The notes under the pieces are model-generated. The model did not search any database, was not told where the DNA came from, and worked only from the letters and a program-made list of their open reading frames with translations. Both the position numbers and the translations under genes were made by a program. This document shows, piece by piece, positions 43,102 to 49,100 of a DNA stretch of 64,000 nucleotides (position 1 is the first letter of the stretch; each line of letters opens with the position of its first letter). Origin of the DNA: Saccostrea cucullata (taxonomy: Eukaryota); NCBI RefSeq assembly GCF_032062105.1, contig NW_026929962.1, positions 868,001 through 932,000 on the forward strand. The letters are read 5' to 3'.

Positions 43102-46100
43102 AGGAGATAATTATGAATTAGAGAAAAATTAATGGCATTTTTAAAAAATCTTCTTCTCAAGAATCACTGGGCCAGGAAAGATGAAACTCCTGTGGAATCA
43201 TTCCCAGGTAGTGTAGATTCAAGTTTGTTCAAATCATGACCCCCGGGGGTAGGGTGGGGCCAAATGGCCGATAAAAGTTTTACATAGGAATATATAGGGA
43301 AACCTTTTAAAATCTTCTTTTCAAGTTCTTCAAAGCCATGCTTAGTGATATTTATAGGGAATCATCCTCAGGTAGTGTAGATTCTAGTTTGTTCAAATCA
43401 TGACCCCCGGGGAGAGGGTGTTAAAATTCAAGCCCCCCCCCCCCCACACCTCAGGAAACTTTCAGTTCTGATCTGATATGTGCTTTTTCCTAGCCAATTG
43501 CTCAGGTGAGCAATGTGGCCCCTGGGCCTCTTGTTACAACTATTTCTTTTGATAACATAAACAACAGCTTTTTAGGTAAAATCGAACTCGAAAATTAACC
43601 TTGTCATTGGTATTGTACAAAATTATTTTGCCAAAACATTCTGATTGTACATACAATGTACATACTCTGAAGCTGATATTAAGACTTTTGATGTTTTGAT
43701 AGATAATAACTACATGTATGTGGTGTTATGAGATCTAGTCTCAGGATCATGAAACAGACTTAGACTTAAGTCAAGTTTTTAATCGCCTGAAAGATGTTTA
43801 TTAATTACTAAGCGAATCTCTACTTTTGCAGTTAACAACACTTTTGTAAATCAATATTAAAAAGTATTTTAATTTTTGTCTAATCAAAATTCTAGTACAG
43901 CATGAATATTTTCACTTAAGCTTAAGATGTTTCATGATCCTGGGGCCAGATTTTTCGGATAACAGAGACAAAATTGCGCTCCGTGATGTCCTTAATATTT
44001 CTATACTCAACTTCTCTTACTTGTATAGTAGACTGGCCTGCCTGTCTGATATCCGATATACAGCGTACAGTAAAGACAGGCAATACCAATCTAACTTGTA
44101 TAGCTATATTCCTTAAACACGTGTAGATGGAGATTATGTCTCACAGTTGATTCGATAAGCAAGAGGATGTTCTACGCGTTCGATGTATATTTGACTCGAG
44201 ACAACCTTCTAACAAAAAAACTTGATTAAACGAGCATATCGACAGTTTTGTTCAAGTTTTTTTTTTTGCAAATTCTACGGTCGATATGATGACCTTTATA
44301 TCAAATAAAGTATATTTTGTAGACGAATGCTGATAACGTTTTTCATACAAACTGTTAGGCAAATATTTTCACACTGAATATTATCTACCGTATATAACGG
44401 ACTTTTCCGTTTCCCAATCATTACAAGGATCACACAGCACCTCTTTGGCACCTTAAATTATCTCTGCTGATGTTTATAACTATAGAGGTCCTTGTTTGCT
44501 TTGCTCCTGGTTTGCATTGTTTCAGTGGACTTTTGAGAATAATTTGTGTTGGCTATCTTCTTATTTCATCTAGTCTAATGACATTACTTGAATATTGAAC
44601 TTTTATTTAGATTTTTTTTTATTTCGAATCTTTATTTTCAAATAAATCCTAATTGTTTTGTAGTTTATGAAGTATGTATTTAAATGTGACCTTATTTCTG
44701 CTTTCTGTTGATCAATTTTCGAAATATGAACGAACTATGTTTTATGAAAGCAATAGTGGTGAGATTGATCATAGAGGAAAGATGATCTTTTTGTTATTCT
44801 TAACAACATGACTAAGCGCATATAATGCAAATATACTCTCCTAAAACTAGTTAATAAAAAGGGGTTTAGTCGAGTTTTAATTTGTTGGCTGTGAGATCTA
44901 AGATGAGGATGGACAAATGTTTCTAGGTTTCCTTCATATCATTGTACAGATATTTTAGTCGATAATTTTTAAAAAATAAAGTCTTCTCTAAGTAATATCA
45001 AATTTGTATTAATTGAATTATTTGAATTAAACGTCTTGATTTTCTTTATTTGGCATCATATATAGAATGAAATATATGGAAATAACGAACAATATTCAAA
45101 GTAAAATGTCCATTAAACAATACAAATCAGGAGCAGAGCATTAAACACATTTCTATCCTCCAAAACATCAGAGGTGGGATTAGGTGTCATAGAGGATTGA
45201 GCATCCCCAGATCACACCCACGCACTGTGTGCTCCTTGCCATGATAGGTAAATAAAAGAAAAACCCTTTGACAGTTAAGAATGTAAATAATGGTCTAACA
45301 ATAAAAACGAAATACATAAAGCATTTGACTTAATAATATGATGTATTTTCTGACAAGGTCATTTTATCGACCATCATAACATCTGTAAAAAATGAGCTCC
45401 TGTTCAACAGTTTGAACTCAAAGCTTCATCCATTATTGCCTTCTCAAGAAAGAATACGTTCAATCCTCTATGTTTACTTCTCCCCCAAAAGTTAGTTTTG
45501 AAAGCAACACTAAAATGCACTGCCTATCAGTATATTTATGGTGTTAATGTTTTCGAAAAACTCGAAAGAACTTATTAGAAAATATGAAATAGTTTCCCCT
45601 CGAACAAATGTAATCGTTTAATTTTACGACTATTTATGCAATTATACTTCATCATAAATCTAGGAGTAATCATACAGATGCGGCTAGTATTCTTTATTTA
45701 GTTTTTTGAGACAAGGCTTTTGCACAAATTGTGCTTCTCTATTTTTAATGCAAAATTTATGCAAAATATTAGGAAAAAAGAAAACCGTTGCTGAGACTTT
45801 CAATGTAAATATATCGACGACTAATTTTTAATTAACAGTTAATATCTCATTAAAGTACACGAAAGGTAGGTATCCATCACTTTTACGTACTCAGAAAAGT
45901 AAGATGTAGACAAAAGGGAATCAATGATTGTTTGGCATTACGTAAGACAGGTTAATAAGGGAAAACTCGGTTGACTAATACAAAAATCACAAGAGCTCAC
46001 TACTTACGGTTTCTACACGTTCTTCCTGTTGATTCAGAAATGATAATTTAATTTAAAAATTCAAGGACATATGAGAATGGAAATCGGTTAACATAAGAGA

Positions 46101-49100
46101 AAAGAAAACTAATTCATTTCATTTGTTAAAAATAATATTAAAAAAACAAATATGACTTTTCTTGAATATCACAAATATCAAATGAATTCTCAGTAGGTGG
46201 AATTAATTTATGCTTGTTGAATATTGATATTTTGAAATAATGTGTAATAATATACAGGTAAAAATTCAATATAAATGTAATACCTCTTTTGATCCAAGGT
46301 TAAAAAGCGATATAGTACAAAGATTACTTTTCAATATGTATTAACATTTTTATCTGCAACTGTTATGCAAATGTCATTTTTTTGAGCACTCAGAATATTG
46401 AGATAGAGAGAACATATTAGAACTTATTAGAAAATATGAAATAATTCCTCGAACAAATGTAATCGTTTAATTTTATGACTATTTATGCAGTTATACATCA
46501 TCATAAATTTAGGAATAATCATACAGATGCGGCTAGTAGTCTTCATTTAGTTTTTTGAGACAAGGTTTGGGCACCAATTGTGCTTCTCTATTTTTAATGC
46601 AAAATTTTTGCAAGATACAAATCAGGAGCAGAGCATTAAACACATTTCTATCGTCAAAAACATCAGAGGTGAAATTAGGTGTCATAGAGGATTGAGCATC
46701 CCCAGATCACACCCACGCACTGTGTGCTCCTTGCCATGATAGGTAAATAAAAGAAAAACCCTTTGACAGTTAAGTATGTAAATAATGGCCTAACAATAAA
46801 AATGAAATACATGAAGCATTTGACTTTATAATATGATGTATTTTCTGACATGGTCATTTTATCGACCATCGTAACATTTGTAAACATTGAGCTCCTGTTC
46901 AACAGTTTGAACTCAAAGCTTCATCCATTATTGCCTTCTCAAGAAAGAAATCGTTCAATCCTCTATGTTTACTTCTCCCCAAGAAAGTAAGTTTTGAAAT
47001 AAACACTAAAAATGCACTGTCTATCAGTATATTTATGGTTTTATTTTTCGAAAAACTCGAAAGAACTTAGTAGAAAATATGAAATAAACAAACAAATGTA
47101 ATCGTTTAATTTTACGACTATTTATGCAATTATACATCATCATAAATTTAGGAATAATCATACAGATGCGGCTAGTATTCTTGATTTAGTTTTTTGAGAC
47201 AAGGTTTGGGCACCAATTGTGCTTCTCTATTTTTATGCAAAATATTATTAAAAAAGAAAACCATTGCTGAGACCTTCAATGTAAACATATCGATGACTAA
47301 TTTTTAATTAACAGTTAATATCTCATTTAAATACACAAAAGGTAGGTATCCATCACTTTTACACACTCAGAAAAGCAAGATGTAGACAAAAGGGAATCAA
47401 TGATTGTTTGGCATTACGTAATATATGTAAATAAGGGAAAATTCGGTTGACTAATACAAAAATCACAAGAGCTCACTACTTACGGTTTCTACACGTTCTT
47501 CCTAATGAATCAGGAATGATAATTTAATTCAAAAATTCAAGGACATATGAGAAAAGAAAACTAATTCATTTCATTTGTTAAAAATAATATTAACAAAACA
47601 AATATGACCTTTCTTAAATATCACAAATATCAAATGAATTCTCAAAAGGTGAGATTAATTTATGCTTGTTGAATATTGATATCCTTTGAAATAATGTGTA
47701 ATAATAAACAGGTAGAAATTCAATATAAATGTCATACCTCTTTTGATCCAAGGTTAAAAAGCGATATAGTACAAAGATTACTTTTCAATATTTATTAACA
47801 TTTTTATCTGCAAATGTTATGCAAATGTCATGTTTTGCGCACTCAGAATATTGGGATAGAGACAAAAGTTATTAATTTGGGCATGGAATTAAATATGTTA
47901 ATAAAGGAGAAATTCGAAAGAGGAAATAAAACGACTAATTAAACTCGGCCAAGCTTATTACTTACGGTTTCTACACGCTCTTCCTGTTTATTTAATAATA
48001 ACATAAATATGAAGAAAAACGTTGATTTGATTTTTAATGCAATAAAAACATTTCAATGTTTATGATAAATTAAAATAAAGTAAAAATAAAGTAACTTACA
48101 TTTCTTAAATATCCCGAATATCAAATGAATTCTCAAAAAGTAGAATTAAGTCAGTGGAATATTGAGATACTTTGAAAAATTGCTTAAAAGTTATTTATAT
48201 GTATGACCCAGTTTTACATGTAGAAATCCAATAAAAATGTAATACCTCTTTTGAACCCGAGTTAAAGCACACTTACTGGCGTGATAAAAAGATTAATGTC
48301 AATATTTTCTAAAGGTTTTTATCTGCAAATATTAAAGCTCAACGACATTCTTCGCCAGAAACATTTTTTTTCTCAGTATTTTTTTTTTTGGTTGATTTAA
48401 GAATCAACTTCCATAAACACATGATCATATTGCATATTCCTGATAAAAAAAATAAAAATTTAGAATACTTTATTTAAAAAAAAATGATGAAAGTCATATC
48501 TTAAAATGAAGAATTTTGATAGTTTGTATATATTTTTAAAGTCAAGAATGCATACAAAATAAATGCCATCTCTAGAGTCGATTACCATCATGGATCTTTT
48601 TAGGGTAGGTACATGCAACTTCATCCAAAACCAACTTGAAATCTTATACATAACTTTTGGCCCTGTATGATTTCATTGGTTGGATATTTTGAAAATATGA
48701 ATCTAAACAATGTATTAAACAAGAGCCAAATTGGTTTCATTATTTGTTTTTCAAACACAATTAATATGATGGCCAGAAAACCTGTACATAGAGAATTACT
48801 GAAAAAAATGAAGATATCCTTCGTCGTTGACATTATGTTTTAATTTATGAGGATCGAGTTTGAAACGTTTATAGGAATCATATTCTTCCTTCGTGTTTTA
48901 TAATTTTTGTTGTGATAAGATAGCTGAATTTTTACCAGATAAATATACAAATTTAATAAGAAAATTAAAATAATACAAAAGCATGAAAACGATTTTGCCT
49001 TTCTTCATTACATACGTTTTCACTGTAAGCATTCCAGTTGACCATAAGAGAGAAAACCCTTTATTTTGTAATCTTTCCGTTCGTCAACATTTTTGTGCAA

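What the first reader, a model, noticed from the sequence alone, without database searches (positions are those of the whole stretch)
46008..47983. Three tandem 18-nt microexons (EERVET) amplified by intronic duplication
Seen: three copies, each with an AG acceptor and GTAAGTA donor. The oldest copy has clearly diverged flanks, yet its exon differs only by a synonymous GAA>GAG, and the acceptors vary (CAG/TAG) while keeping AG. That pattern suggests purifying selection on a real exon. Inference: 0-3 copies could be included, tuning the length and charge of the N-terminal arm, and copy number may be polymorphic. These exons are invisible to the ORF track.
Basis: partly seen in the sequence, partly recalled or inferred. 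Interest (0 to 1): 0.8.

Follow-up and report, generated by a model that had tools for sequence, protein, structure and literature searches.

The report
Duplicated microexons in oyster calmodulin-like gene
An oyster calcium-binding gene has three tiny six-amino-acid exons, made by duplication, that are probably spliced in or out to change the length and acidity of the protein's floppy front end; the mechanism is known from other genes, and related oysters carry their own sets of such exons in the same gene.

Summary
Confirmed. Three 18-nt AG|…|GTAAGTA units encoding EERVET (47983-47966, 47501-47484, 46025-46008, minus strand) lie in the phase-0 first intron of a four-EF-hand calmodulin-like gene of the oyster Saccostrea cucullata. 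They occur nowhere else in the assembly.

Copies A and B come from an old tandem duplication (flanks 66% identical, exon 17/18, P≈0.006). B and C come from a recent one (94%).

The orthologous intron holds one homologous 18-nt exon in S. echinata (EVPEET), four candidates in Crassostrea virginica and five in Magallana. Magallana RefSeq isoforms include none to three of these modules in genomic order, and those exons are invariant across haplotypes (0/84 sites against 7% in the intron). So these are very likely real cassette microexons. Length, phase and acidity are conserved between species; the peptide is not.

No RNA from this species was obtainable, so inclusion of 0-3 copies here is inferred, and the third copy has no independent DNA support. 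It probably works like the troponin T N-terminal microexon array, and is a new member of a known kind. The scan's earlier notes held nothing on this locus.

The parts
49323..49400 (-). First exon of the calmodulin-like gene: 5' UTR ending in the start ATG (49325-49323), followed by a phase-0 GTAAG donor. The 5' end of the exon is not determined.
   Evidence: the same ATG|GT exon starts the M. gigas RefSeq model (L004:6001)
47966..47983 (-). Microexon A, 18 nt, EERVET (codon 2 GAG), CAG acceptor, GTAAGTA donor
   Evidence: aligned homologue in S. echinata L003:1984-2001
47484..47501 (-). Microexon B, 18 nt, EERVET, TAG acceptor, GTAAGTA donor
46008..46025 (-). Microexon C, 18 nt, EERVET, identical to B, CAG acceptor, GTAAGTA donor
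47295..48334 (.). Old tandem duplication with a period of about 480-500 nt (A unit and B unit), 63-68% identical
   Evidence: an independent DNA run holds a 505-nt contig spanning copy A and one B/C-type copy (X1 record 3)
45120..47865 (.). Recent duplication: 45120-46412 (C unit) and 46615-47865 (B unit), 94% identical without gaps, 8 indels. A third copy of a 200-nt internal piece lies at the junction (46419-46617). The unit includes part of a dispersed repeat.
42226..42243 (-). Possible dead microexon: aligns to an AG-18 nt-GTAAGT candidate of S. echinata (L003:4350-4367) but has AA for AG and AT for GT
   Evidence: tentative
40348..40378 (-). Coding exon of 31 nt (starts TDNFAQ), phase 0 to phase 1
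40131..40265 (-). Coding exon of 135 nt, EF-hand 1 and start of EF-hand 2
   Evidence: 100% identical to the S. echinata protein P0029
38007..38243 (-). Coding exon of 237 nt, end of EF-hand 2, EF-hands 3 and 4
37217..37272 (-). Coding part of the last exon to the stop, with an acidic C-terminal tail; the protein is 153 aa without microexons and 159/165/171 aa with 1/2/3

Best explanation
The three 18-mers are functional phase-0 cassette microexons in intron 1 of a calmodulin-like, four-EF-hand gene of Saccostrea cucullata. One ancestral microexon, shared with S. echinata, was copied with its flanking intron and splice sites in two tandem duplications: an old one of about 0.5 kb (A/B) and a recent one of about 1.5 kb (B/C). 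The start ATG ends exon 1 and every module is 18 nt, so any subset keeps the frame and inserts 0, 6, 12 or 18 acidic residues (net -2 per copy) into a disordered arm ahead of helix A. Shown: anatomy, duplication history, selection signal on A versus B, orthologous arrays, combinatorial RefSeq isoforms in Magallana. Inferred: variable inclusion in this species. More weakly inferred (about 0.45): the arm's length and charge tune target binding or calcium response, as in the troponin T N-terminal variable region, rather than being tolerated variation.
For: Exon 17/18 identical between A and B against 66% flanks; the chance of no amino-acid change over that distance is 0.0035, and identity drops at the exon borders (12/28 upstream, 9/17 downstream of the donor). 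An aligned 18-nt exon with intact AG and GTAAG exists in S. echinata. M. gigas RefSeq isoforms insert DENQTQ, VENPTE, DQSNLD, EQND or EGYLTL between Met and TDNF, in six distinct module combinations plus a form with none. Each module maps to an AG…GTRAG exon in genomic order. These exons show 0/84 variable sites against 232/3283 in the intron across five Magallana contigs, two of them identical (Fisher P=0.004). C. virginica has four such 18-mers, two of them a duplicate pair. 18-nt windows: 13 against 0.65 expected. Residues 1-22 of the three-module M. gigas isoform have pLDDT below 50.
Against: No RNA evidence from this species: no RNA holder was found and the one guessed RNA run does not cover exon 1. 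RefSeq isoforms are predictions; that they rest on RNA-seq alignments is my knowledge of that pipeline and was not checked here. The peptide is not conserved in S. echinata (3/6 aa). B versus C identity is uninformative (P=0.34). The Saccostrea exon is only marginally alignable to any Magallana module (z=3.0), so one-to-one orthology across genera is not shown.
Confidence: 0.78

Rival explanations
1. The exons are real but inclusion is fixed or limited: all are constitutive, or only one copy is used per transcript, so there is no 0-3 ladder.
For: All three donors match the consensus GTAAGT. In M. gigas one module (EGYLTL) appears only alone among the isoforms seen.
Against: The introns between copies are 464 and 1458 nt, long enough for sequential splicing, and all are phase 0. 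M. gigas models show none to three modules together.
Confidence: 0.12
2. The exons are relics that are no longer spliced in this species, and the A/B similarity comes from recent gene conversion or chance.
For: No transcript seen here. The S. echinata copy differs at 5 of 18 sites on a short branch. A probable dead homologous exon lies in the same intron.
Against: A/B identity stops at the splice sites, which a conversion tract need not do. All six splice sites are intact. B's acceptor changed from CAACAG to CATTAG and stayed YAG. Orthologous arrays are used in related oysters.
Confidence: 0.07
3. The third copy (B/C duplication) is an assembly artefact: two alleles of a heterozygous animal joined in tandem, so the true number is two.
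For: The assembly is large and fragmented (1.17 Gb, 23,869 contigs). B and C units differ by 6%, near the 3-5% seen between Magallana haplotypes in this intron. No second haplotig of the locus is in the assembly. The independent run shows a path with two copies and no listed junction piece (tables truncated, and the run is only about 90% identical to the window).
Against: The junction carries a third, diverged copy (92-93%) of a 200-nt internal piece, which a simple allele join does not create and complex tandem duplication does.
Confidence: 0.15
4. The exons are spliced variably, but the variation is nearly neutral: an unstructured arm tolerates any short in-frame acidic insert, so microexons are born and lost without tuning function.
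For: Peptides turn over fast between species; copy number runs from 1 to 5; the arm is predicted disordered.
Against: Significant conservation within lineages, persistence of an exact 18-nt length, and net negative charge in 10 of 11 distinct modules.
Confidence: 0.3

Closest known systems
Orthologous 'neo-calmodulin-like' gene of Magallana gigas (RefSeq XP_011416015.2, XP_034323703-706, XP_019919515/516)
   Same: Same gene (94-98% identical core exons), same ATG-ending first exon, same intron, 18-nt phase-0 acidic modules, annotated as combinatorial isoforms.
   Different: Five diverged modules there against three copies of one peptide here. The introns no longer align between genera, and the duplications seen here are specific to Saccostrea.
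Troponin T N-terminal variable region (TNNT3 exons 4-8)
   Same: A run of same-phase alternatively spliced exons near the 5' end that changes the acidic content of an N-terminal region of a calcium-regulatory protein (PMC2447309, PMC8559874).
   Different: Unrelated protein. Here the array sits on the EF-hand protein itself. Functional effects are measured for troponin T and untested here. This is an analogy, not membership.
Tandem duplicated exons, including mutually exclusive substitution events (PMC9741552)
   Same: Origin by duplication of an exon with its flanks; homologous exons in tandem.
   Different: Substitution events swap diverged exons inside a domain. Here the copies encode the same peptide and can only change the copy number.
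Neural SRRM3/4 (eMIC)-dependent microexons (PMC10551640)
   Same: Size within the microexon range, frame-preserving.
   Different: No UGC within 55 nt upstream of A and none within 60 nt of B or C; tissue pattern unknown.
Calmodulin
   Same: Four EF-hand loops and best PDB matches to calmodulins; intron directly after the ATG and a 31-nt next coding exon, as in calmodulin genes (own knowledge).
   Different: Far from the near-invariant calmodulin sequence, shorter central linker, acidic C-terminal tail; one of dozens of calmodulin-like paralogues in this genome (46 exon matches).

Membership tests
Cassette microexon | Very short length (3-27 nt) with canonical AG and GT splice sites | tested here: met
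   18 nt, CAG/TAG and GTAAGTA
Cassette microexon | Frame-preserving and free of stops in the host gene's phase | tested here: met
   phase-0 intron after the ATG; EERVET
Cassette microexon | Included in spliced mRNA of this species | tested here: inconclusive
   no RNA run served; X6 has no depth on exon 1
Cassette microexon | Alternative inclusion (skipped in some transcripts) | tested here: inconclusive
   seen only in RefSeq models of the M. gigas orthologue, not in this species
Cassette microexon | Evolutionary constraint above the flanking intron | tested here: met
   A vs B P=0.006; Magallana 0/84 vs 7%. Not met for the peptide against S. echinata, where only length and splice sites are kept.
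Tandem exon duplication | Homologous exons in tandem with homologous flanking intron | tested here: met
Mutually exclusive tandem exons | Exactly one copy per transcript | not testable with these tools
   needs long reads; no steric or frame block (introns 464 and 1458 nt); M. gigas models combine modules
SRRM3/4 (eMIC)-regulated neural microexon | UGC motif close upstream of the acceptor | tested here: not met
   TGC only at -58 for A, none within 60 nt for B and C
SRRM3/4 (eMIC)-regulated neural microexon | Neural-enriched inclusion | not testable with these tools
   no tissue RNA available
Calmodulin-like EF-hand protein (host gene) | Paired EF-hand domains and similarity to calmodulin | tested here: met
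   Pfam EF-hand hits in both core exons; S. echinata orthologue matches calmodulin chains at E about 1e-33

The most novel reading that the evidence does not exclude
An oyster-wide, fast-turning microexon array on a calmodulin-like protein acts as a counted length-and-charge dial. In S. cucullata the copies encode the same peptide, so only the number included matters; that number is tissue-regulated, varies between individuals as DNA copy number, and changes calcium or target binding. The intron would then show microexon birth (B/C), persistence (A/B) and death (42243-42226) together.
Probability: 0.15. Interest if true: 0.6.

Novelty: new member of a known kind. Interest (0 to 1): 0.38.

Why it matters
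It is a clean natural series for how microexons arise and turn over: 1 copy in S. echinata, at least 2 in an unnamed close relative, 3 here, 4 in C. virginica and 5 in Magallana, all at one intron, with datable duplications. Because the three copies encode the same peptide, copy number can be tested apart from sequence. It also corrects annotation: the S. echinata RefSeq model starts at an ATG inside the intron and misses both the conserved first exon and the microexon. The mechanisms (microexons, tandem exon duplication, acidic variable N-terminal arms) are established, and RefSeq already models the Magallana array, so surprise for a specialist is moderate. My paper searches found no study of this gene's array.

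Tried and rejected
1) I first took S. cucullata RefSeq proteins of 170 and 152 aa (P0019, P0014; 18 aa apart) for three-copy and zero-copy isoforms. They belong to the neighbouring gene at window 17.8-20.5 kb, so that reading was dropped.
2) RNA evidence: the one run search returned DNA-type runs of relatives. The laid runs gave no spliced joints, and the guessed RNA run covers only repeats.
3) A search for RNA-derived proteins holding the spliced N-terminus returned only unspliced genomic gene calls.
4) Ostrea edulis loci were not on record.
5) A global alignment of C. virginica against M. gigas intron 1 is meaningless (46% identity) and was discarded.
6) C. virginica polymorphism (0/72 against 2%) has no power.
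7) A transposon origin of the 18-mer was rejected: no other copy in the genome.
The large protein-representative search was not needed.
9) Paper searches for microexon with oyster or calmodulin found nothing on this gene.

Full report
OBSERVATION. Each is 18 nt, preceded by CAG or TAG, followed by GTAAGTA, and encodes EERVET; A differs from B and C only by GAG for GAA in codon 2. The whole assembly holds exactly these three matches at up to two mismatches.

HOST GENE AND ORGANISM. The units lie in the 8.9-kb first intron of a calmodulin-like gene. Exon 1 ends in the start ATG (49325-49323, phase 0). Coding exons follow at 40378-40348, 40265-40131, 38243-38007 and 37272-37217. The product is 153 aa without microexons. 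Both large exons carry EF-hand domains, and the S. echinata orthologue matches calmodulin structures best. The window's contig is 1,073,845 nt long, the length recorded for the Saccostrea cucullata protein XP_062620971, whose exons match the neighbouring gene in the window. The genome is therefore S. cucullata. The gene is single-copy in the assembly and sits in a cluster of calmodulin-like paralogues.

DUPLICATION HISTORY. A and B lie 482 nt apart in a tandem unit whose flanks are 66% identical. Jukes-Cantor distances (A-B 0.45, A-echinata 0.29, B-echinata 0.38) make this duplication about as old as the split from S. echinata, or older. B and C lie 1476 nt apart in units 94% identical with 8 indels, and a third copy of a 200-nt internal piece sits at their junction. 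An independent DNA run of an organism about 90% identical to the window holds a 505-nt contig that runs from copy A to one B/C-type copy (X1 record 3), so the A/B pair is not an assembly error. The third copy has no independent confirmation. The three-part junction argues for a real duplication, but a tandem join of two alleles is not excluded (about 0.15).

SELECTION. A versus B is 17/18 identical in the exon (P=0.006 at flank identity) and 26/27 with the splice sites (P=0.0002). The simulated chance of no amino-acid change is 0.0035, and identity falls to 12/28 and 9/17 just outside the splice sites, which fits selection better than a conversion tract. B versus C is uninformative (P=0.34). 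S. echinata has one exon at the aligned position, AG-18 nt-GTAAGT, encoding EVPEET. It is only 13/18 identical, the same as its flanks. Between species, length, phase, splice sites and acidity are kept and the peptide is not.

ORTHOLOGUES. RefSeq isoforms of the M. gigas orthologue differ only between the first Met and TDNF. They contain none, one, two or three of the modules DENQTQ, VENPTE, DQSNLD, EQND and EGYLTL. Each module is an AG…GTRAG exon of 18 nt (EQND 12 nt) in intron 1, in the order used by the isoforms, in both M. gigas and M. angulata. Across five Magallana contigs (two identical) the 84 exon sites and 40 splice-site positions are invariant, while 7.1% of intron sites vary (Fisher P=0.004). 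C. virginica has four 18-nt candidates, of which EDSPAQ and EDSPAE are a duplicate pair (z=8.5). Over the four species, 13 windows of 18 nt occur against 0.65 expected. Ten of 11 distinct modules are net negative. Homology between the Saccostrea exon and any Magallana module is marginal (z=3.0). That RefSeq isoforms of this kind come from RNA-seq alignments is my knowledge of the annotation pipeline, not a result here.

MECHANISM. Shown: any subset of the three exons keeps the frame, and the introns between them (464 and 1458 nt) impose no steric block. An AlphaFold model of the three-module M. gigas isoform gives pLDDT below 50 for residues 1-22, ahead of the folded EF-hand core, so the modules extend a flexible acidic arm. 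Inferred (0.78): the exons are variably included in S. cucullata, giving 153-171-aa forms. More weakly inferred (about 0.45): the arm tunes target binding or calcium response, by analogy with troponin T, where alternative exons 4-8 change the acidic content of the N-terminal region (PMC8559874; PMC2447309). The copies lack a nearby UGC, so nothing points to the SRRM3/4 neural programme described in PMC10551640.

LIMITS. No transcript from this species was seen. The run search offered no recorded RNA run and the laid contigs gave no splice joints. The scan's earlier notes concern other genes and were not used.

VERDICT. It is the Saccostrea version of an oyster-wide array of frame-preserving microexons in intron 1 of one calmodulin-like gene, expanded by two tandem duplications. 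It is a new member of known kinds (microexons, tandem exon duplication) and probably works like the troponin T variable arm. I found no paper on it. Interest 0.38.

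Noticed in passing
window 42243-42226 (-) and L003:4350-4367: S. echinata has a second AG-18 nt-GTAAGT candidate (NNSIYL). Its aligned counterpart in the window has lost both splice sites, so it may be a dead microexon; it could also be chance in S. echinata.
   Followed up: partly
window 40571-40569 (-) and L003:6956-6958: A 3-nt AG|AGC|GT candidate is conserved between the window and S. echinata about 190 nt before the 31-nt exon; the window's donor (GTGAAC) is weak.
   Followed up: no
L003:5001-5012: The S. echinata RefSeq model XP_061173317 starts at an ATG in the middle of intron 1, in sequence resembling the window's dispersed repeat. 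It ignores the conserved ATG exon at L003:494 and the microexon at 1984-2001, so it is probably mis-annotated.
   Followed up: partly
L006:4442-4459 and 5279-5296: C. virginica has its own duplicated microexon pair (EDSPAQ, EDSPAE), also present in a second sample (L011).
   Followed up: partly
L004, L005, L006: Newer RefSeq models fuse this gene with its upstream or downstream calmodulin-like neighbour (310, 338, 339 aa) in M. gigas, M. angulata and C. virginica; these are likely annotation fusions, though read-through was not tested.
   Followed up: no
window 17.8-63 kb and contig G000:C12099, C21329: Large tandem clusters of calmodulin-like genes (46 exon matches genome-wide). Four minus-strand genes in the window have a candidate ATG|GT first exon (63051, 57408, 49323, 20521).
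   Followed up: no
window 21521-24928 (-) and 25437-26390 (-): An intact 1135-aa endonuclease/reverse-transcriptase ORF preceded by a 317-aa ORF, which looks like a full-length LINE-type retrotransposon (from the translation alone).
   Followed up: no
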